60,253 nt of DNA. Source: Octopus bimaculoides. Taxonomy: Eukaryota. Where the stretch lies: contig NC_068981.1 of the NCBI RefSeq assembly GCF_001194135.2, positions 171,145,424 through 171,205,676 of the forward strand, written 5' to 3'. This document shows, one piece after another, positions 3,021 to 59,700 of the stretch. The translations under genes were made by a program, and so were the position numbers. Each line of letters begins with the position of its first letter. The stretch's first letter is position 1. The notes under the pieces are model-generated. The model was not told the DNA's origin, ran no database searches, and saw only the letters and a program-made list of their open reading frames with translations.

Positions 3021-3220
3021 AATGGAGCTGGCAGAATCGTTAGTAAACTGGGCTAAATGCTTAGCGGCATTCCATCCATCCTTATGTTCCGAGTTCAAAT
3101 TCTGCAGAGGTCGATTTTACCTTTCATCCTTTCGGGGGTCAATGAAATGAGTACCAGTAATCAACTAGCCCCCCTTCCGCCAAACTTTTAGGACTTGTGT
3201 CTATAGCAGAAAGGATTATT
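3021..3220 (+). mobile_element. SINE family A (tRNA-like head plus conserved central domain, Meta/MESC-like)
   Basis: Head gagctggcagaatcgttag...gagttcaaatt and core gtcgattttacctttcatcctttcgggggtcaatgaaatgagtaccag. The same structure occurs at 6843, 11475, 31845 and 39470. The domain name is from recollection. Confidence 0.8.
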
Positions 3221-6309: not shown

Positions 6310-6765
6310 AGTCCTTTTCATGATGTGGTGGCTTGTGTGCGTCAATGACCCTCTGAGAACTATGCCAGCGAAGCGTAAAGTTTCAGTAGGACTTCTAATT
6401 CAGGAGAGAGGTGAGACTAATATGGACCAACTATTCCCAGAAATTAAAATGGCTTTACAATAGAGCTACAAACTGACTTACAAAAGTAAAGTTTCTGAAG
6501 CATAGATGACAATTCTAAACGAACAGTACTTGTGGGAGAAAGGCCTGACCTGAGAAAAGAAAGTGACACGGTACAGCAAAATCCGAAAGGATGGATAGAC
6601 TACACATTAAAGAAACCAGAATCAGGCCCTGACCTAAAAGCTGCAGGGAATGCAAAGAAAGGACGCTCAAAAATTTGTTGTAGGCGTCCAAGGTAGCCCA
6701 GAACAATGGAAGAAATTCGTCGATATCCTCAACAGGGAGCGAAGAGCTTAAGTGAGCTAGCCCTA
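6310..6765 (+). mobile_element. Heavily deleted RTE-clade LINE remnant
   Basis: RTE-like 5' UTR (gtggtggcttgtgtgcgtcaatgaccct...ctatgccagc) followed by decayed C-terminal motifs ILNEQYLWE...WIDYTLKKPES...QWKKFVDI...GSEELK*. Confidence 0.5.
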
Positions 6766-6842: not shown

Positions 6843-7047
6843 AGGCGGCAAGCTGGCGGACACGTTCGCACGCCGGACTAAATGCTTAGCAGTATTTCGC
6901 CTGTCTTTACGATCTGAGTTCAAATTTCGCAGAGGTCGACTTTGCCTTTCATCCTTTCGGGGTCGATAAATTAAGTACCAGTTGTGTACTGAGGTCGATC
7001 TAATTGACTGGTCCCCTCCCTCAAAATTTCGGGCCTTCTGCTTAGAG
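6843..7047 (+). mobile_element. SINE family A, full length
   Basis: ggcggcaagctggcgg...ctgagttcaaatt...gtcgactttgcctttcatcctttcggggtcgataaattaagtaccag...ggccttctgcttagag. Confidence 0.85.
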
Positions 7048-8046
7048 TTTCTAGTCTTTACACTTTATGTTCAAATCCCTTCTACTTCAACTTTGCTTTT
7101 CATCATCTACTAGTTGATAAATAAAGTACCAGCAAGTGCTGAAGTCGATTCTTTTACCGATCTCACTTTATTTTTCTATATATCTGTTTTGTCACACTCT
7201 GTCTCTTCTCTCAGTTTCTCTCTCACTCTCTCTTCTTCTTCTTCTTCTTCTTCCCGTCTCACTCATTGTTTGTATTTACAAGAAATCTGCTGTAATTAAA
7301 CTGGCAGAATGATGCATGCAGCCGACTTTATGTAAGCAAGATGCGCTGTATTTGACGACTGTGCTCAACTCTCTCGGGAATTGAGGGCTCCAAAAATGAT
7401 GGAAGATTTATAATTCCGGAAGAAAAAACAGAGGTGTCATAACTGGTAACATTTTTATTATAGTCCCGTACTATAAAGACTCGCCTATAATTAAACAACT
7501 ATCTTGAAATCGTCGTTTCTATTACATCCACACATTTTAAATCTAAAAATGTATTAATATATTCCATGAGGTTTTCTATATCAAATTACACATTCGTTCT
7601 CCCTTCTGATATGTATTCCCTAGAAATCACCTATTACCAAACTAAACAGGTAGTAATTTATGTATAGAAAAGTACAAAAATGATATAGGCAGCATAACAA
7701 TACAGCAAGATATAAATAGAAAGCCTGTTGCGAATCTCTTTACTCTCCGTGATAAAAAGAAAATGCCCCAGTATTATATCATGCATTATCACCATATTTA
7801 ATGCAAGCAAAATTGAGATTTGTCTCGTAACACATTCCAGGTTGGCTAATAGTAATTTCTTAAGAATTTTGTGTTTTGATCATGTTACTCGGCTGTTTAT
7901 TTTCCGACGTGTTTTATCGATAAGCCGCGTCTACCACATTTATGAAATACGACCAAACCATTATATTATTCTTTGAATTCTTACTCGATCTTGTTATCTC
8001 CTCTGAAGATTCTTCGTTGTCATTCAACACTGATATATGCGTGCGA

Positions 8047-8088
<42 letters not shown>

Positions 8089-8247
8089 GTTTGCGCGCGT
8101 ATATGCGTACAATGTGCGTGTATGCACGTAAGTACATGTACATTGTACGTAAATACCCAAGTATTGAAATTAATAATAAACATTGATATTAAAATACATT
8201 TATACATATGTGGTCATGTATATGTGTGTGTGGGTTTGTGTGTGTAG

Positions 8248-8306
<59 letters not shown>

Positions 8307-8971
8307 GAGAGAGAGAGAATGAGAAAAAGAAACATAGATAAACAGATAGATAGAGAAATACGCAATTGATACTTATACTTGCTTACATTTAACTAAAGTA
8401 TGCGTGAAACAGATACGATAGATTATACAATACTCTCCCGCAATTTTCAGGTTTCCAATCGCATGGAGAAAGGACATTCATTTCCNNNNNNNNNNNNNNN
8501 NNNNNNNNNNNNNNNNNNNNNNNNNNNNNNNNNNNNNNNNNNNNNNNNNNNCAAAATGTTGCTATGCTTGTTTAGAGTATTGCGTATGTGGATACCTCCC
8601 TATCTATCTACCAACCTACCTATCTACCTACCTACTTACTTGCCTACCTACCTACCATCCTACACACATACATACATACATACATACATACCTATCTACT
8701 TACATACATACATACNNNNNNNNNNTTTAACTAAAGTATGCGTGAAACAGATACGATAGATTATACAATACTCTCCCGCAATTTTCAGGTTTCCAATCGC
8801 ATGGAGAAAGGACATTCATTTCCACCGTTCGCATGTTTTATTTCTAGTTTCAAAATGTTGCTATGCTTGTTTAGAGTATTGCGTATGTGGATACCTCCCT
8901 ATCTATCTACCAACCTACCTATCTACCTACCTACTTACTTGCCTACCTACCTACCATCCTANNNNNNNNNN

Positions 8972-9010
<39 letters not shown>

Positions 9011-9982
9011 ACGCATACACAGATACTCATACTCATATGTATATAGATAGATGTATAAATATGCACATACACATAAACATACGTATATGCATAAATATAC
9101 ACATACACATTAAACATACATACATACACACATACATATATACATACATACATACATCCATGAATGCATTCATACATACATACATACATCCATACATTTA
9201 TACATACATACATGCATACATACATACATACATAAATACATAAATACATACATACATACATAGAAGGATAGGTAGATATGTGTATATACATACATGCATG
9301 TGTGCATGTGCGCGCGTGTTTTATTTGATATTAAATTTACGATAGTGGTACCTGTGTTGTTTACCGTCTTATTTTCAATATCTCGAGAAGCCGTGTATCG
9401 AATCTCACCCCATAGATCATTCTCAGCATATATCAGCCGGGAAGCCGTACCTCCTTGACAGAATCTTATATCAAAGATGCCCTTCTCTGAGATTAAATAT
9501 TATTTATCTTTTATCTTGCTTCTTTACTTCTTATTTGCTTGGATTGATGGTACTACCTTTTAGAATAGCTAAACCAAATTGTCTGAAACATGTCTGCCTT
9601 GTTTCGGAATATCAATGCAGTTTGATGTGAGCAAATGATCAACCAGTGCCAAATAACCTATATCTATTTGTGTATTTATACATCTATGACAGTTGGAGCG
9701 GCCTTTATATGTGAGTGTTTGTCAGTGGGAAATCCTATACAAGAGTAATTATAAACTACTTCAATCAAGAGAATCCGAAAAGTCACGCCCAGCTGTTTGA
9801 ATGCGATAAGTATACGATTGATGTGAATTCAAACGGAAAGGCATTTGAAAAAAAATACCGCTTAATATAAAACATCACCACTGTGTTATAAAAATGGTGC
9901 GGATGATTTTGATTAAGTTTTACACGTTTGATATTATACGTGTGTGTCTGGTGTGCGTGTGTGTAGGCGTTTGTATGTGCAT

Positions 9983-10017
<35 letters not shown>

Positions 10018-10033
10018 CGCGCGTGCGTGTGTG

Positions 10034-10069
<36 letters not shown>

Positions 10070-10345
10070 GAGCACTCAGTCGGTTACGACGACGAGAATC
10101 CCAGCTGATACGATCAACGGGACAGCTTGCTCATGAAATTAAATGGCAAGTGGCTGAGCACTCCACAGACACGTGTACCCTTAACGTATTTCTCAGGGAG
10201 ATTCAGCGTGACACAGAGTGTGAAATACAGGTACTACTCATTTTTGCCAGCTGAGTGGACTGGAGCAACGGGAAATAGAGTATCTTGGTCAAGTGCACAA
10301 CGATCGTGAGCCGAAGGCCCTAACCCCTAAGCCATGCGCTTTCAC
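10070..10345 (-). mobile_element. SINE family C, tail variant 2
   Basis: Head and core as at 4700 and 43790. The tail (gacgacgag...gatcaacgg...gattcagcgtgacacagagtgtga) is shared with the SINE at 12174. Confidence 0.8.
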
Positions 10346-11200
10346 ACCTATATATAGGCACTTGTTCTTCAGAAGACAGCTGTCCAATAATCTAAAATTC
10401 AGCAAGTGCTGTCTGAGAGACAATATGCAACTTTGGAAGGCTGCCTGCACAAGCTCAACACTGCTATTGTGGAATTTTCTATTTGATATAGGGATCTCCC
10501 GGGCTTTAACGTCTATGGAGTGAATTTCCTCAATAGATGAGTCAAGTATCTCAGCAGTTGGAATTATCACTGGTACTGCAAATGAAGTGTGAGATATTGT
10601 CTTGTAAGAGGAGAATTCTGAATTTCATATTTTTGTGTGTCTGGTATGATATTGTCAGGTCACTCTATCTTTATTCAAAGAAAGTTCGTATATGTTTTTA
10701 TCCATGCCCTAGTATTTGAAGCATTCTTTTAGTGGAACAGGAGAGATAATGTGACCGTTGATGCATGGGTTTTGTGTCTGGGAACTGATTTTCCACGTTC
10801 AGCAATCAAATGTGAACATTTCTTTTGGCTAAATATCATTCCTATGTCAGCCAAAAATTCCAGCTGTTTTTTGGCATTGGTAACACTTTTAGCATAAATT
10901 TTGATGTCATTCACGAAGTAATTATGGGTTATCCTAATATCTGTAGCAGTTGTCATTTGACTTTTGTAGCAGGAATGATAATGGATTTAATGCCAAAATG
11001 AATACAATTACAGAAAGACTATCTCCTTGGAATATTCACTCAGAAATATTGATAACATTGGAGACAACCATTCTGCTCTCTGCATGCATATATGTTTGTA
11101 ATGAACGTTTTCTAAGAGATTTTTTGCTCCTATATCCTTGGTTTTATTTGCCAAAAACTAAAGAAAAACTATTAGACATGGAGATTTATAGCACGCTACA
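10346..11200 (-). pseudogene. Decayed R4/Dong-type reverse transcriptase fragment
   Basis: The minus strand gives IFQGDSLSVIVFILALNPLSFLL (RT motif near 11040-10970), then ITHNYFVNDIKIYAKS...DIGMIFSQKKCSHL (degenerate FMDD region), then EIHSIDVKAREI...FH. Stops and frameshifts are present. Confidence 0.75.

Positions 11201-11412: not shown

Positions 11413-11474
<62 letters not shown>
11413..11474. repeat. (ATT)n microsatellite
   Basis: Directly visible. Confidence 0.95.
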
Positions 11475-11476
<2 letters not shown>

Positions 11477-11669
11477 GGTGGTGAGCTGGTAGAATCGTTA
11501 GCGCGCCGGACGAAATGCATAGCGATATTTCGTCTGTAGCTACGTTCTGAGTTCAAATTCCGCCGAGGTCGAGTTCACATTTCATTCTTTCAGGGGTCGA
11601 AAAAATAAGTACCAGTTGAACACTCAATGCCTCCTCAAAAATTGCTGCCCTTCTGGCAAAATTTGAAAC
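11475..11669 (+). mobile_element. SINE family A
   Basis: ggtggtgagctggtagaatcgttagc...ctgagttcaaattccgccgaggtcga...ttcaggggtcgaaaaaataagtaccag. Confidence 0.85.
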
Positions 11670-12173
11670 GCTCAGATACCTGCAGACTTTCAGAGCCCAA
11701 CATTGCAGACGGGTGATTTAATGTTTTGCAAAACTATCAAGACCGTTGAGAAGACTATTAATAGATTGAAAAACGTTACTAGGGTTAGGCTGTCTAAATT
11801 ACACTCACCAGAAACAAAATGCCTAATAAAAGATATTCCAAAATTCGAATTTAAAAAAGAATACTACAATACTGAAGTACATTTAATATGAGAGAGGGTA
11901 ATATTTGAAACCCTGCCCCCGGAAGTAAAATATGAAGATTTAGAACCTTGTTTTATAGACTAGGTAAGATTAGTGTCGATAAAAATAACCGATAATGAAT
12001 TGATATAGACTGTAGAAACGCGATTGCTTGAGGGTGGGGCTCAAGTAAGGACGTCCATCCTCATTTGTACATATATTCCTTCACATTCATCATTTTATGT
12101 GTTATGTTCCCACATGTACCGTCCTCTCTGTGTTTTAGGCGTTGTGCCCAATAACGAATTAAACTGATCATTT
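11670..12173 (+). mobile_element. Unassigned element 3' end, copy 1 (protein C-terminus plus 3' UTR)
   Basis: Reads ...TVEKTINRLKNVTRVRLSKLHSPETKCLIKDIPKFEFKKEYYNTEVHLI*ERVIFETLPPEVKYEDLEPCFID*. It is homologous in frame to copy 2, and the following non-coding part is also homologous. Confidence 0.5.
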
Positions 12174-12558
12174 GTTGGCACTACGTCGGTTACCACGACG
12201 AGGGTTCCAGTTGATCCGATCAACAGAACAGCCTGCTCGTGAAATTAACGTGCAAGTGGCTGAGAACTCCACAGATACGTGTACACATAACGTAGTTCTC
12301 GGGGAAGATTCAGCGTGACACAGAGTGTGATAAGACTGGCCCTTTGAAATTCAGGTACAACAGAAATAGGAAGAAAGAGTGAGGAGAAAGTTGTGGTGAA
12401 AGAGTACAGCAGGGTTCGCCACCATCCTCTGCCGGAGCCTCGTGAGGCTTTAGGTGTTTTCGCTCAATAAACACTCACAACGCCCGGTCTGGGAATCGAA
12501 ACCGCGATCCTACGACCGCGAGTACGCTACCCTAACCACTGGGCTATTGCGTCTCCAC
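12174..12558 (-). mobile_element. SINE family D (different tRNA-like head, same tail as the 10070 SINE) with 14-bp target site duplication
   Basis: Head on the minus strand: gtggagacgcaatagcccagtggttagggt...gtttcgattcccag. Direct repeat taaactgatcattt at 12160-12173 and 12559-12572. Confidence 0.9.
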
Positions 12559-12584
12559 TAAACTGATCATTTAGTGACTTATAT

Positions 12585-13030
12585 AACTAGTAAACCCATT
12601 GAAAAAACTATTAATAAATTTCAAAACATCACGAGGGTGAAGCTTTCCAAAATGCACCCACCTGAAAGAAAATGCATTATATTAGATAGACCAAGATTCG
12701 AAACATTACAAAAATATTACAAAACCGAGGTATATTTGGTAGGAGAGAGGGTAAGGTTTGAAACCCTGCCCCCGGAAATAAAATATGAGTATTTAGGTAT
12801 TTATTTTATTGACTATTAAGATTTGTTTCGATAACATAAGAAGTAATGAACTGAAATGAACAGTACAAACGCGATTGTTTGAGGGTGGGGATCAGGCAAG
12901 GACGTATTTATTTTCATTCATCGTTTTTATGTTTTATGTCTCCACGTGTACTGTCTTTGTCTGTCCTTGTACCGTCCCCTCTGTATTTCAGGCCTCGTGC
13001 CAAATAAAGAATTCAACTTTAATTATAATT
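12585..13030 (+). mobile_element. Unassigned element 3' end, copy 2
   Basis: PIEKTINKFQNITRVKLSKMHPPERKCIILDRPRFETLQKYYKTEVYLVGERVRFETLPPEIKYEYLGIYFIDY*, followed by about 200 bp containing aaacgcgattg.ttgagggtgggg...aaggacgt and AATAAA. Confidence 0.5.
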
Positions 13031-37024: not shown

Positions 37025-37765
37025 AGTACATCGTAGTCGTTGACGATGAGATCAACACCAGACTCGCCAAAGCAAGTGCTGCCTTCGGCAGACTCCACAA
37101 GAATGTATGGGACAGAAGAGGCATCACCTCCATGACAAAGATCAAGGTCTACAAAGCTGTCGTACTCACCACCCTACTCTATGGATGTGAGTCGTGGACC
37201 GTCTACCAACGCCACGCCAAAAGACTAAATCACTTCCACACCACCAGGCTGAGGAAACTACTTGGCATAAGCTGGCAGGAAATGATACCAGACACAGAAG
37301 TCGTCACTCGTGCCGGGCTCCCAAGCATCTCTACCATCCTGATGAAAACTCAGCTTCGCTGGACTGGTCATGTAGCCCGCATGCCAGACTACAGAATACC
37401 CAAGAAGCTTCTGTTTGGTGAGCTCCAGCACGGCAAGCGCACTCATAGCGGCCGGAGGAAATGGTTTAAAGGCAACCTAAATGTATCACTGAAGGCCTTC
37501 AACATTGACCCGTCATCATGGGAGCAGACAGCTTTAGATAGGATCAAGTGGCGGGCCGCTGTTCCCAACGGTGCCCGCCAATATGAAAGTGACAGGAAAG
37601 CTGCTGCAGAGAAGCGCAGGCAGAACAGAAAGAACAATGCTTTGAAGCCCCCGGCACCTGCTACCATTCCCTGCCATCTCCGCATACACCGATGATGACC
37701 TCCCCACTCCCCTCTAGGATGATCAGTTGGTCCTCGTTGTTCCGACGGACGAAAAACACACCGTA
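37025..37765 (+). mobile_element. RTE (BovB-like) LINE, 5'-truncated; open C-terminal ORF2 fragment 37036-37695
   Basis: VVDDEINTRLAKASAAFGRL...KIKVYKAVVLTTLLYGCESWT...QLRWTGHVARMPDYRIPKKLLFGEL...DRIKWRAAV is the classic RTE post-RT region. A short 3' UTR ends cgacggacgaa. Confidence 0.92.
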
Positions 37766-57444: not shown

Positions 57445-59700
57445 TATATGCTTCGCAGAAGACTACAGATACGCAAGCTACTAGAGGCACCCAACTCCTC
57501 TCCGGCCTGGACGTTCACAATGCTGATGGGAACAAAACTGGTCTGCCAGTCGCTATAGAGTAGACATTGACTTTAAACTACAACACTTTAACGATCATGC
57601 ATGACATCTGCACTAAGTTTGTTCCTGCAGAAAAATACAAAACCCAGGGATTCTAATGAGACGACAAGCAAAAATCTCAAATCGTCTAAATAGGCCACTA
57701 AAGGATAACAAACGATCCTACATCAAACGACCATTGCTGGAGATTTAAAATGAACACTTCCATGGAAAGGAAAGGGCAGAATAGGAGGCCAGGGCTGTCA
57801 AAATATTATGACATATGACAAAATAATCTGCTTCAGCACGGTAGAAAATAGGGGCAGTATGTGAAGGAAATGGCTCACTGGCTGCAGCCCCCACCCAGAG
57901 AATCAGTGAAATATTGAATGTGCAATACAAGAGTGCTTTCACCACTCTACTGGAACACTTGCAAGTAGCTATGCTTGATGAGTTGTTTGGTTCCACAGAT
58001 CTACACAACGAAATGGCAGTTATTGATAGCATCAACATAGAGGAAACTGATGTGATATTAGCCATTGATGAGATGAGCGTAAACAAGCCCTGATGGATTC
58101 TCAACAATCCTCCTAAAGAAATGCAATGGGGCTCTAGCTAGACCACTACAGATTCTCTTCCAGTGCTTACTCACAACAGGGAAACTTCCGTAAAAGTTAA
58201 AGGGTAGCATAATATGCCCTATCCATGAGGGAGGTAACAGACCAGATGCTAAGAATTATAGTCCTGTCTCACTAACATCCCGTGTCAGCAAAGGCATGGA
58301 GCACATCGCCAGGAAGAAACTAATTGCGTTCCTTACAGATAATGACTAGCTTTCTGACACCCAGCATGGCTTTCGCTCAGTAAGAAACTGTCTTACACAG
58401 CTTTTGCAACAGTATGACTGCATGTTGAAACAATTAACGACTCATACAAACGTGGATGTGATATATCTCGACTTTGCAAAGGCCTTTGATAAGACTGATC
58501 ATGGGATGATATGTCACAAACTACGGTGACTCAGCATAACTGGAAAAATCGGAGAGTGGTTGCATCAATTCTTAAAAGACAGATGCCAGGCTGTAGTAAC
58601 CAACGGAGCCCTCTCCACGGAGACATTATTAGAAATTGGAGTGCCTCAGGGAACTGTATTGGGTCCGTTGCTCTTCGTGGTAGCTCTTTTAGACATGCCA
58701 TTAGTTACACAGACAGCCACACTTACTAGCAGTGCCGATGACACAAAAGTAGGACAAACAGTCAAGGAAACTTCTGACGCTAATCTTCTGCAGAAAGACC
58801 TAGATGCCATATATAAACGGGCTGAGAACAACAACATGCAATTTGATGCAGGAAAATTCCAAGCCCTCTTCTACCAGATAATTGGTGATCAGACGTTACC
58901 ACGGTACTTTGGACCAAAGGTAGTGACAATCCTAAAATCACATACAGTACGTGATCTTGGGAGCAACGATGCCTCGTTTCACATGCATATCACCAAGATT
59001 GTGGCAGTGTGCAGGCAAATGGCCGGGTGGATTCTGAGAACCTTCAGGACAAGGGACCGGGAAACTATGCTGGTCCTATACAGGACATTTGTTCTCAGCC
59101 CTCTAGATTATTGCTGTCAACTGTGATCACCTTACAGTGTAGGATTAATGGCAGAACTTGAGGCGGTTCAGCGATACTACACGAGAAAAATTGCATCAAT
59201 GGAACAGCTGAGATGCTGGGAGAAATTGAAAGATCTACGACTCTAATCCCAGGAGCGAAGATGGGAGGGGTATATAGTGATATATGTATGGAAGATACTG
59301 GCGGAGCTGGCACCAAACTTTGGAATTGAGTTATACCAGACCTTGAATTGGACGTCACTGCACTGTTACAAAAGAACCAGCTGTCTCATCTAAGGTGAGG
59401 ACCATGTACTGCAATAGCTTGGGATTCAAGGGCCTACAGCTATTTAACTCCTTGCTAAAACATCTGAGAGATCTCCATGGAGTGGGGGTAGATGTTTTCA
59501 AGAAACAACTTGACTTCTTGCTATTCAAGATCCCAAAATCAATATGAAGGCAGGAAACTCAAAAGAGAGCAGCGGTATCGAGCTCCTTCCTTCACCAAAA
59601 GCCAATCCCATAGAATTGGCCAATCAAAATGTCATTACACTGGTGGTGTCCCAGCATGACCACAGCCTCAGGGCTGAAACATATAAAAGAATAAAAGAAT
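57445..59700 (+). mobile_element. CR1-like LINE, 5'-truncated, decayed ORF2 with RT domain and 3' tail
   Basis: KNYSPVSLTS..SKGME; QHGFR; VDVIYLDFAKAFDK; GVPQGTVLGPLLF; SADDTK; LQKDLDAIY..AENNNMQFDAGK; GWILRTFRTRD; LDYCCQL. It ends in (aaagaat) repeats at 59700. Confidence 0.92.

What the first reader, a model, noticed from the sequence alone, without database searches (positions are those of the whole stretch)
11670..13030. Two head-to-tail copies of an unassigned protein C-terminus diverged under coding constraint
Seen: two units of about 450-500 bp align without frameshift over about 75 codons. Many changes are synonymous (gag/gaa, aag/aaa, act/acg, tct/tcc, cca/cct) or conservative (R/K, V/I, L/M). 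Both end at nearly the same stop, followed by a shared UTR containing aaacgcgattg.ttgagggtgggg...aaggacgt and aataa(a/c)gaatt. Removing the TSD-flanked SINE leaves copy 1 joined almost directly to a 5'-truncated copy 2. Inference: these are two subfamilies of one mobile element inserted in tandem, not a neutral local duplication. I cannot assign the peptide to a known family. Candidates are an unclassified non-LTR 3' end with self-targeting, or an LTR-element pol end with a polypurine tract and short LTR.
Basis: partly seen in the sequence, partly recalled or inferred. Interest (0 to 1): 0.7.

Follow-up and report, generated by a model that had tools for sequence, protein, structure and literature searches.

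The report
Tandem fragments of gag-only octopus retroposon
The two repeats are real: they are 5'-truncated tail ends of an octopus-specific retroposon that carries only a gag-like (ORF1-type) gene and shares its last ~65 bases with a common SINE and with an L1/Tx1-type LINE, so this is an ordinary but apparently undescribed kind of junk DNA rather than a new system.

Summary
Two units, 11715-12165 and 12568-13018, are 73% identical over 455 nt and share one reading frame with no indels. A SINE with a perfect 14-bp target-site duplication sits exactly at their junction.

The peptide can now be placed. It is the C-terminal ~85-residue domain of a protein family found only in Octopus bimaculoides and O. 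sinensis. The family has RRM-like domain(s), a CCHC zinc knuckle, a K/E-rich linker and this domain. That matches a Type-I ORF1p/gag-like protein, not a pol end.

Related loci show a ~1.9-kb unit: a 160-nt 5'UTR, one ORF and a ~230-nt 3'UTR, with no reverse transcriptase. Copies share a fixed 3' end, vary in 5' truncation and lack poly(A). In O. bimaculoides, diverged units lie in precise head-to-tail arrays next to a LINE with APE and zf-RVT domains. The last ~65 nt are homologous to the tails of that LINE and of a SINE.

I read the units as an ORF1-only, HAL1-like non-autonomous retroposon mobilised in trans. The LTR alternative is rejected.

Coding constraint between the two window copies is only modestly supported (dN/dS 0.34, P about 0.015-0.04). 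Both copies start at the same codon, so duplication of one dead fragment is not excluded.

The parts
11413..11475 (.). (TTA)21 microsatellite directly upstream of the stacked block. The far flank after unit 2 is also TTA-like (TTAATTATAA at 13019-13028).
   Evidence: Tandem Repeats Finder; sequence read.
11477..11698 (+). SINE-A copy, a short interspersed repeat. Its 3' region belongs to the same tail family as the units. The 3' end coordinate is approximate.
   Evidence: 82% identical to a TSD-flanked full SINE-A in O. sinensis (L001 6447-6675) over positions 1-137. Other copies lie at window 6847-7009 and 3025-3158.
11699..11714 (.). 16-nt spacer between the SINE-A end and the start of unit 1.
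   Evidence: Alignment of SINE-A copies. There is no homology to family proteins upstream of 11715.
11715..11963 (+). Unit 1 coding remnant: the C-terminal domain of the gag-like ORF, 82 codons. It has an internal TGA at 11889-11891 and the terminal TAG at 11961-11963.
   Evidence: Translation. Aligns to the C-termini of P0002, P0003, P0005 and P0009.
11964..12165 (+). Unit 1 3'UTR. It contains the conserved block AAACGCGATTGCTTGAGGGTGGGG, the tail at about 12100-12165, AATAAC at 12150-12155 and the element end ...GAATTAAACT.
   Evidence: nhmmer tail model hit at 12086-12165, E 5e-16.
12160..12173 (.). Left copy of the 14-bp target-site duplication TAAACTGATCATTT of SINE-B. It spans the unit 1 / unit 2 junction.
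   Evidence: the repeat finder family D12, 100% identity.
12174..12558 (-). SINE-B insertion (385 nt), inserted after the tandem had formed.
   Evidence: Perfect TSD. Relatives at window 10072-10223 (86%) and at O. sinensis L001 10562-10735 (88%). 3' end defined by alignment.
12559..12572 (.). Right copy of the SINE-B target-site duplication.
12568..12819 (+). Unit 2 coding remnant: the intact C-terminal domain frame (HLVTYITSKPIEK...FIDY) with stop TAA at 12817-12819.
   Evidence: BLASTP to O. sinensis XP_036360159.1: 40% identity over 77 aa, E 5e-13. Profile search E 2.2e-4 against 1.84 billion proteins.
12820..13018 (+). Unit 2 3'UTR. It contains the conserved block AAACGCGATTGTTTGAGGGTGGGG, the tail at about 12950-13018, AATAAA at 13003-13008 and the element end ...GAATTCAACT. 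No poly(A) follows.
   Evidence: nhmmer tail model hit at 12956-13017, E 1e-16. A tail model built from the window copies alone finds the unit tails in L002 and L004 (E about 1e-7) and the SINE-A tail (E 2.4e-3).

Best explanation
The two units are 5'-truncated 3' ends of a non-autonomous, ORF1-only non-LTR retroposon of octopuses. Each holds the last ~83 codons plus a ~200-nt 3'UTR.

Shown:
- The full unit is about 1.9 kb: a 160-nt 5'UTR, one gag-like ORF of about 445 codons and a ~230-nt 3'UTR.
- The ORF encodes RRM-like domain(s), a CCHC zinc knuckle, a K/E-rich linker and the C-terminal domain seen in the window.
- The unit has no endonuclease or reverse transcriptase. Its 3'UTR ends in a fixed, poly(A)-less terminus just after an AATAAA.
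- Its last ~65 nt are homologous to the tails of SINE-A and of an L1/Tx1-type LINE.

Inferred mechanism:
- The LINE's ORF2 protein recognises this tail and copies the RNA into the genome by target-primed reverse transcription. This gives the common 3' ends and variable 5' truncations.
- New copies tend to land directly against an existing copy of the same tail family, producing head-to-tail stacks.
- In the window the stack is SINE-A | unit 1 | unit 2. A different SINE (SINE-B) later hit the same junction.
- The two units most likely descend from two diverged source elements. The alternative is that one dead fragment was duplicated.
For: Family and architecture:
- A profile of the two window peptides finds one genuine relative among 1.84 billion proteins, O. 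sinensis XP_036360159.1 (pairwise E 5e-13). The only other protein listed, P0001, is a repetitive-protein artefact.
- Iterating gives 9 Octopus-only proteins that share a CCHC knuckle (Pfam PF00098) and the same C-terminus.
- The gene model's 'intron' in L001 is a SINE-A insertion with a 13-bp TSD, so these 'genes' are repeat copies.
- In L002 and L003 the ORF reads through the supposed gap in P0003. There is no intron and the unit contains no RT.

Termini: four copies at other loci end at the homologous position, AATA(A/C)AGAA... These are L001 about 7726, L002 9118 and 11007, and L004 9301. 5' truncation varies: L001 about 5810, L004 about 7917, L002 and L003 full length.

Tail:
- A unit-only tail HMM hits the SINE-A tail at E 2.9e-7.
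- The SINE-A tail matches the LINE tail at 91% over 33 nt.
- The LINE has Exo_endo_phos (8.8e-9) and zf-RVT (4.8e-10) domains.

Stacking:
- In L002, units A|B|C and the LINE each end directly on the motif GTTGAGCAGCAG (5 hits covering all 4 junctions, none elsewhere in L002).
- A and B are about 90% identical at the DNA level. C is only 40-46% identical to A/B in protein.
- The window also has a SINE-A | 5'-truncated SINE-A tandem at 6847 to about 7160.

Fold:
- The AlphaFold2 C-terminal domain model has pLDDT about 80 and b-a-b-b-a-b topology.
- For the P0003 model, the best Foldseek matches are RRM domains at probability about 1, E 0.007-0.08.

Two-source reading: dN/dS is 0.34 with P 0.015. 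Raw divergence is pS 0.43, pN 0.19 and 3'UTR 0.195. Differences avoid conserved residues, P 0.036.
Against: - No target-site duplication could be shown for any unit copy. Only the SINEs have them.
- No intact full-length LINE joining this ORF1 type to the ORF2 was recovered. The RT region in L002 lies in an assembly gap, and the link between ORF1-like unit D and the APE domain is broken.
- Both window units begin at the same codon. Two independent 5' truncations would coincide within a few nt only about 0.3% of the time (my estimate from unit length), so this favours a local duplication or a special mechanism.
- The constraint statistics are weak (P 0.015-0.04) and not independent. One stop across the two copies is compatible with neutral decay. 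An apparent rate heterogeneity proved to be an alignment artefact.
- Copy number in the genome is unknown, because no cephalopod genome could be searched.
- Rfam and ARAGORN do not recognise tRNA heads in the SINEs.
Confidence: 0.72

Rival explanations
1. One 5'-truncated retroposon fragment was inserted once. It was then duplicated locally, by unequal exchange or slippage between its short flanking repeats, and the two dead copies decayed neutrally to 73% identity. The family assignment stays the same. Only the origin of the pair differs.
For: - Both units start at the same codon and end at the same base, with a period of 454 nt once SINE-B is removed.
- They are each other's closest relatives among all sequences available: 62% amino-acid identity to each other against 34-45% to the rest.
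- With a gap-tolerant alignment, the 3'UTR (80.5%) is no less conserved than the CDS (75-77%), and mismatch density is homogeneous, P 0.58.
- One stop codon across the two copies fits neutral decay (my Poisson estimate gives P about 0.18).
- McGurk & Barbash 2018 (PMC5932611) document expansion of TE dimers by unequal exchange.
Against: - dN/dS is 0.34 in the true frame only, permutation P 0.015.
- Synonymous sites are about twice as diverged as non-synonymous and UTR sites.
- Differences avoid family-conserved residues, P 0.036.
- There are no indels in 76 codons but six or more gaps in the 200-nt UTR.
- The duplication boundaries would have to coincide exactly with the element's boundaries.
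Confidence: 0.3
2. The stack was made in one retrotransposition event by template jumping. The reverse transcriptase copied one RNA from its tail, switched to the 3' end of a second tail-bearing RNA and then a third (unit 2, then unit 1, then SINE-A). The whole concatemer was integrated into a TTA-rich site.
For: - Three elements with homologous tails lie head-to-tail with 0-17 nt between them.
- The outer flanks of the whole block are both TTA-rich: (TTA)21 upstream and TTAATTATAA downstream.
- Diverged subfamily members abut precisely in L002.
- A conserved stall site at the boundary between the A-rich linker and the C-terminal domain could explain the identical 5' ends.
- End-to-end template jumping is established for non-LTR reverse transcriptases (my own knowledge: R2 RT, Bibillo & Eickbush 2002; not checked here).
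Against: - There is no direct evidence.
- The flanking 'TSD' is low-complexity and could be chance.
- The other 5'-truncated copies (L001, L004) are cut at different positions, so a strong stall site is not evident.
Confidence: 0.12
3. The units are remnants of a tandemly duplicated host gene family: a domesticated CCHC/gag-derived gene with its own 3'UTR and poly(A) signal. The tail similarity to SINE-A would reflect a SINE fragment in the UTR.
For: - NCBI and UniProt list family members as predicted proteins.
- Units sit in tandem clusters.
- An AATAAA lies near the end of the 3'UTR.
- A TATA-like box lies 27 nt upstream of the first unit in L002.
Against: - Successive units abut with no intergenic spacer.
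- Dispersed copies on different chromosomes share the exact 3' end and are 5'-truncated at different points.
- The copies examined at DNA level (L001-L004) carry frameshifts, stops or SINE insertions, or are interrupted by assembly gaps.
- There are no introns.
- The tail is also the 3' end of a LINE with APE and zf-RVT domains.
Confidence: 0.08
4. The units are the end of an LTR-retrotransposon gag/pol gene followed by a polypurine tract and a short LTR.
For: A CCHC knuckle also occurs in retroviral-type Gag. Tandem units sharing one terminal repeat are known for LTR elements (PMC5932611).
Against: - The first unit of the L002 array is not preceded by the '3'UTR/tail' sequence.
- Isolated copies are not followed by the '5'UTR' sequence.
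- No protease, RT or integrase is present in any unit.
- The tail is shared with a SINE and with an APE-type LINE.
Confidence: 0.02

Closest known systems
HAL1 ('half-L1') elements of mammals
   Same: Both are non-autonomous derivatives of an L1-group LINE that keep only the ORF1 gene and depend on the LINE's ORF2 protein. HAL1 is described this way in PMC5753468. Here the unit has one gag-like ORF, no RT, and the same 3' tail as a LINE with APE and zf-RVT domains.
   Different: - The ORF is Type-I-like (RRM-like plus CCHC plus an extra C-terminal domain), not the Transposase_22 type.
- There is no poly(A) tail.
- The tail is shared with a SINE, which is the 'stringent' type of recognition.
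- Units form precise head-to-tail arrays.
- Derivation from the LINE by loss of ORF2 is inferred, not shown.
Type I ORF1p of L1/Tx1-group LINEs (Khazina & Weichenrieder classification)
   Same: At least one RRM followed by a CCHC knuckle, as defined in PMC5203782. Here there is a Pfam zf-CCHC hit, and the AlphaFold2 model shows a b-a-b-b-a unit before the knuckle with best Foldseek matches to RRMs.
   Different: An 85-residue ferredoxin/RRM-like domain follows a long K/E-rich linker after the knuckle. This domain has no Pfam family and no significant PDB match. The RRM assignment rests on low-confidence models.
Tx1-clade target-specific LINEs and the SINEs they mobilise (Keno, Kibi, Koshi, Tx1-Mar/SINEU)
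   Same: Elements of the L1-group Tx1 clade with sequence-preferring insertion that also mobilise SINEs (PMC4494074). Here all four element junctions in L002 fall on the same 12-nt motif, and a SINE carries the LINE tail.
   Different: Clade membership is untested, because the RT lies in an assembly gap. The apparent 'target' is the element's own 5' end. The window copies are not on that motif.
TE tandem dimers from double insertion (R1 arrays; 'tail-to-internal' non-LTR tandems in Drosophila)
   Same: [quoted passage not shown] The window junction is exactly such a tail-to-internal junction.
   Different: In Drosophila, distinct truncation points proved independent events. Here the two truncation points are identical, and no target duplication is recognisable in the junction.
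HeT-A telomeric retroposon of Drosophila
   Same: A gag-only non-LTR element that relies on another element's RT and builds head-to-tail arrays (arrays mentioned; gag-only nature from my own knowledge).
   Different: The octopus arrays are internal (51 Mb into a 94.6-Mb chromosome). Nothing indicates a telomere role. The proteins show no detected sequence relationship.

Membership tests
Non-LTR retroposon copy made by target-primed reverse transcription | Common, precisely defined 3' end with variable 5' truncation among dispersed copies | tested here: met
   Six copies (two in the window, L001, L002 A and B, L004) end at the homologous AATA(A/C)AGAA... position. 5' ends differ: full length in L002 and L003, about aa 40-70 in L001 and L004, aa about 275 in the window.
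Non-LTR retroposon copy made by target-primed reverse transcription | Target-site duplication flanking the copy | tested here: inconclusive
   No convincing TSD was found for any unit. Clear TSDs exist only for SINE-A in L001 (13 bp) and SINE-B in the window (14 bp).
SINE/LINE partner pair with shared 3' tail | Homologous, co-terminal 3' tail in the non-autonomous element and in an autonomous LINE | tested here: met
   A tail HMM built from units only hits the SINE-A tail at E 2.9e-7 and the LINE tail at E 0.06. The SINE-A tail matches the LINE tail at 91% over 33 nt, E 2.8e-7. The LINE carries Exo_endo_phos and zf-RVT domains.
SINE/LINE partner pair with shared 3' tail | The LINE's reverse transcriptase actually mobilises tail-bearing RNAs | not testable with these tools
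   This needs a retrotransposition assay.
ORF1-only LINE derivative (HAL1-like) | The unit encodes an ORF1-type protein and lacks ORF2, while keeping the LINE-type 3' end | tested here: met
   Units A and B of L002 run 5'UTR, single ORF, 3'UTR, then the next unit within about 1.8-1.9 kb. No EN or RT similarity is present.
ORF1-only LINE derivative (HAL1-like) | The ORF is homologous to ORF1 of the partner LINE | tested here: inconclusive
   A diverged gag-like N-terminus (unit D, L002 12689-13015; 39% identical to unit C) lies directly upstream of the LINE's APE domain in the same orientation. The junction is broken and 5'-truncated, so one intact ORF1-ORF2 element was not seen.
Type I ORF1p (RRM + CCHC) | CCHC zinc knuckle | tested here: met
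   Pfam PF00098: 21.4 and 20.9 bits against a cut-off of 20.8 in P0002 and P0003. The motif CF(A/L)CG(E/K)KGHMKARC is conserved in the alignment.
Type I ORF1p (RRM + CCHC) | At least one RRM domain | tested here: inconclusive
   There is no Pfam RRM hit. The AlphaFold2 models show b-a-b-b-a(-b) units, and the best Foldseek matches are RRMs at E 0.007-0.08, with none at or below 0.001. Model pLDDT is only 50-65.
L1 group / Tx1 clade LINE | APE endonuclease plus an RT that groups with L1/Tx1 in phylogeny | tested here: inconclusive
   APE and zf-RVT domains were found in L002. The RT itself lies in an assembly gap, so no phylogeny was possible.
LTR retrotransposon | Identical long terminal repeats on both sides of the internal region | tested here: not met
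   No tail sequence lies upstream of the first array unit (L002 7329). No 5'UTR sequence lies downstream of the isolated copies in the window, L001 or L004.
tRNA-derived SINE (for the two flanking/inserted short repeats) | Recognisable tRNA-related head | tested here: not met
   ARAGORN found none. Rfam found none at gathering threshold or at E <= 1. They are called SINEs here on the basis of length, copy number, TSDs and a LINE-type tail only. The tRNA origin of octopus SINEs is recalled from the literature, not shown here.

The most novel reading that the evidence does not exclude
Octopuses harbour a gag-only retroposon whose own 5' terminal motif (GTTGAGCAGCAG) is the preferred landing site of the partner LINE machinery. 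Units, LINEs and SINEs of one tail family would then stack into internal head-to-tail arrays, a non-telomeric analogue of HeT-A/TART arrays. Under this reading, the window pair represents a distinct short subfamily that starts exactly at the C-terminal RRM-like domain. Its coding sequence would still have been under selection, meaning a free-standing 82-residue domain with a function in trans.
Probability: 0.12. Interest if true: 0.6.

Novelty: new member of a known kind. Interest (0 to 1): 0.3.

Why it matters
- It assigns a previously unplaceable peptide, and a set of 'uncharacterized protein' or 'CCHC-type domain-containing protein' gene models in two Octopus genomes, to a retroposon family. 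Those models should be treated as repeats, not genes. One model splices out a SINE as an intron.
- It links an abundant octopus SINE to a candidate partner LINE through a shared tail. That is useful for annotating the very repeat-rich cephalopod genomes.
- It gives an invertebrate parallel to the mammalian half-L1 elements.
- The precise head-to-tail stacking on one motif is a testable hint of target preference.
- None of this changes general understanding of retrotransposition.

Tried and rejected
- **Pfam on the two window peptides:** no hit.
- **Word-index homologue search with unit 2:** nothing. The relative appeared only with the full HMMER scan.
- **P0001 from that scan:** a repetitive protein matched 11 times over a 16-residue stretch. 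I rejected it as an artefact.
- **Exact-protein look-ups of window ORFs, to identify the genome:** not on record.
- **Metagenome scan for the 21-mer TTTGAAACCCTGCCCCCGGAA:** no match.
- **SINE-B tail against unit tail:** no similarity. The tail partner is SINE-A, not the inserted SINE-B.
- **Mismatch-clustering test:** it looked highly significant on the MAFFT alignment. It vanished (P 0.58) once two UTR indels of 16 and 21 nt were allowed, so I retract it as evidence of constraint.
- **Absence of stops in unit 2:** the permutation P of 0.027 is not a fair test. A two-lineage Poisson estimate gives about 0.18.
- **Supposed intron between residues 57 and 59 of P0003:** the ORF reads through it in L002 and L003, so it is no argument for a host gene.
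- **Foldseek of the C-terminal domain:** only generic ferredoxin-like matches, E >= 0.07.
- **TSD searches around units in the window, L001 and L004:** nothing convincing.
- **tRNA detection in the SINEs:** negative.
- **Bacterial promoter/terminator scans:** not run, because they are irrelevant to a eukaryotic window.
Full report
**1. The observation**

The window is AT-rich eukaryotic draft sequence with N gaps, many microsatellites and short interspersed repeats.

Units 11716-12165 and 12569-13018 are 73% identical over 455 nt (E 5e-68). Nothing else in the 60 kb resembles them. They lie 853 nt apart, start to start.

Between them sits a 385-nt repeat (12174-12558, minus orientation). It is flanked by a perfect 14-bp direct repeat TAAACTGATCATTT. 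Relatives exist at 10072-10223 and in Octopus sinensis. With that insert removed, unit 2 starts 0-4 nt after unit 1 ends, giving a period of 454 nt.

One frame is shared and free of indels for 76 codons.
- Unit 2 is open from 12568 to TAA at 12817-12819.
- Unit 1 has one TGA (11889-11891) and ends in TAG at 11961-11963.

One correction is needed. The frame upstream of about 11715 in unit 1 runs through a 16-nt spacer into the 3' part of another short repeat, SINE-A at 11477 to about 11698. Both units therefore begin at the same codon.

**2. Is there coding constraint?**

Evidence in favour:
- Nei-Gojobori dN/dS is 0.34 in the shared frame (and its antisense mirror) and 1.15-1.5 in the other frames.
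- I placed the observed substitutions at random on bases of the same type. This gives 35.2 +/- 2.7 amino-acid differences against 29 observed, P 0.015.
- Raw divergence is 0.43 at synonymous sites, 0.19 at non-synonymous sites and 0.195 in the 3'UTR.
- Differences between the two copies are rarer at residues conserved in outgroup family members: 10 of 36 against 22 of 44, P 0.036.

Evidence that did not hold up:
- One stop across the two copies fits neutral decay.
- A striking clustering of mismatches disappeared once two UTR indels were allowed.

Constraint is therefore supported, but only modestly.

**3. What the peptide is**

Pfam and the word-index search found nothing. A profile of the two peptides run against 1.84 billion representative proteins found one real relative. 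It is O. sinensis XP_036360159.1 (E 2.2e-4; pairwise 40% over 77 aa, E 5e-13).

Iteration produced nine proteins, all from O. bimaculoides or O. sinensis where a source organism is given (one, P0010, has none). They align as follows:
- an N-terminal region;
- a CCHC zinc knuckle (Pfam PF00098 just above threshold);
- a K/E-rich linker;
- the ~85-residue C-terminal domain, which ends at the same place as the window peptides.

The structure models are only partly informative.
- The AlphaFold2 model of the C-terminal domain has pLDDT about 80 and b-a-b-b-a-b topology. Foldseek gives only generic ferredoxin-like matches.
- The full-protein model is poor (pLDDT 50). It places a b-a-b-b-a unit before the knuckle, and its best PDB matches are RRM domains at E 0.007-0.08.

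This architecture fits Type I ORF1p, defined as an RRM plus a CCHC knuckle and found in L1/Tx1-like elements of non-mammalian animals (PMC5203782). The C-terminal domain itself remains unassigned.

**4. What the unit is**

Four loci were fetched.

*L001 (O. sinensis).*
- The gene model's 'intron' is a SINE-A insertion with a 13-bp TSD.
- Its 3'UTR is interrupted by another SINE and then continues with the same UTR as the window units.

*L002 (O. bimaculoides).*
- At least three units lie head to tail.
- Units A (about 7329-9118) and B (about 9119-11007) are about 90% identical.
- Unit C (from 11008) is only 40-46% identical to A/B in protein.
- Each unit has a 160-nt leader, one ORF that reads straight through the supposed gap in P0003, and a ~230-nt 3'UTR.
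- No unit shows EN or RT similarity.

*3' ends.* All copies end at a homologous AATA(A/C)AGAA... terminus without poly(A). Their 5' ends differ.

*The LINE.*
- Downstream of unit C lies a further gag-like N-terminus.
- After it comes a LINE ORF2 with Exo_endo_phos and zf-RVT domains. The RT region falls in an assembly gap.
- The LINE's 3'UTR ends in the same tail.

*Tail statistics.*
- A model built only from unit tails finds the SINE-A tail at E 2.9e-7.
- A model built only from the two window tails finds the other units at E about 1e-7 and SINE-A at E 2.4e-3.
- The SINE-A tail matches the LINE tail at 91% over 33 nt.

*Junction motif.* Every element junction in L002 falls on GTTGAGCAGCAG (with up to two mismatches). 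That motif occurs nowhere else in L002.

**5. Mechanism**

Shown:
- a gag-only ~1.9-kb repeat family with a fixed 3' end and variable 5' truncation;
- a tail shared with a SINE and with a LINE of APE/zf-RVT type;
- precise head-to-tail stacks.

Inferred:
- The LINE's ORF2 protein recognises the tail and copies these RNAs by target-primed reverse transcription, as in other tail-sharing LINE/SINE pairs (PMC4494074).
- The family is an ORF1-only derivative, like the mammalian HAL1 (PMC5753468).
- Stacks arise by repeated insertion at one place. This is the 'tail-to-internal' tandem described for Drosophila non-LTR elements (PMC5932611).

The window shows such a stack: SINE-A | unit 1 | unit 2. 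SINE-B was added later at the same junction. A second example is a SINE-A | truncated SINE-A pair at 6847 to about 7160.

**6. The open point**

Two independent truncations at the same codon are very unlikely. Three explanations remain:
- one fragment was duplicated and decayed (about 0.3);
- the same site and microhomology, or a stall point at the boundary between the A-rich linker and the domain, produced the same end twice;
- one template-jumping event produced the whole stack.

The constraint statistics favour two source lineages but do not settle it. A genome-wide census of 5' ends and subfamilies would.

**7. Comparison and verdict**

The LTR reading is rejected, because no repeat is shared by both ends. 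The host-gene reading is unlikely:
- successive units have no spacer between them;
- there are no introns;
- truncated copies are dispersed across chromosomes;
- the copies examined at DNA level carry frameshifts, stops or SINE insertions, or are interrupted by assembly gaps.

I file this as a new member of a known kind: an ORF1-only non-autonomous LINE derivative sharing a tail with a SINE. I could not check Repbase or a cephalopod genome, so it may already be catalogued there. Interest is low to moderate.

The organism is inferred to be an octopod. Both SINEs and all protein relatives are from Octopus. The species was not identified.

Noticed in passing
window 6847-7160: A SINE-A copy is followed directly by a 5'-truncated second SINE-A (positions about 72-163 of the consensus). 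This is another tail-to-internal tandem of the same tail family.
   Followed up: partly
L001 6001-7007 (O. sinensis CM016864.1): The RefSeq gene model XP_036360159.1 removes a TSD-flanked SINE-A insertion (6447-6675) as an 'intron'. The upstream frame continues beyond its annotated Met. The 'gene' is a decayed repeat copy.
   Followed up: yes
L002 7329, 9116, 11008, 16072, 16083: The 12-nt motif GTTGAGCAGCAG (up to 2 mismatches) directly follows every element 3' end in this O. bimaculoides array. After the LINE it occurs twice in tandem with no gag ORF behind it. It may be a target sequence rather than only an element 5' end.
   Followed up: partly
L002 7296-7303: A TATAAATA box lies 27 nt upstream of the first base of the first unit of the array. 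Downstream units have only the preceding unit's AAATAAAG about 10 nt upstream.
   Followed up: no
L002 3268-3740: An ORF fragment with a motif pattern that recalls the GIY-YIG nuclease of Penelope-like elements lies upstream of the array. This was judged by eye only.
   Followed up: no
window 37132-37695 and 58560-59126: Two other retroelement ORF fragments. The second hits RVT_1 below threshold (26.7 against 29.6 bits). The first has no Pfam hit but looks like a LINE ORF2 C-terminal region. Neither resembles the L002 LINE pieces.
   Followed up: partly
window 12055-12070 and 12950-12970: Each unit carries its own UTR deletion relative to the family. Unit 2 lacks 16 nt that are present in unit 1 and L001. 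Unit 1 lacks the 21-nt TGTCTTTGTCTGTCCTTGT segment that is present in unit 2, L002, L004, SINE-A and the LINE.
   Followed up: partly
window 10072-10223: A 5'-truncated SINE-B copy whose 3' end abuts a (TA)n microsatellite.
   Followed up: no
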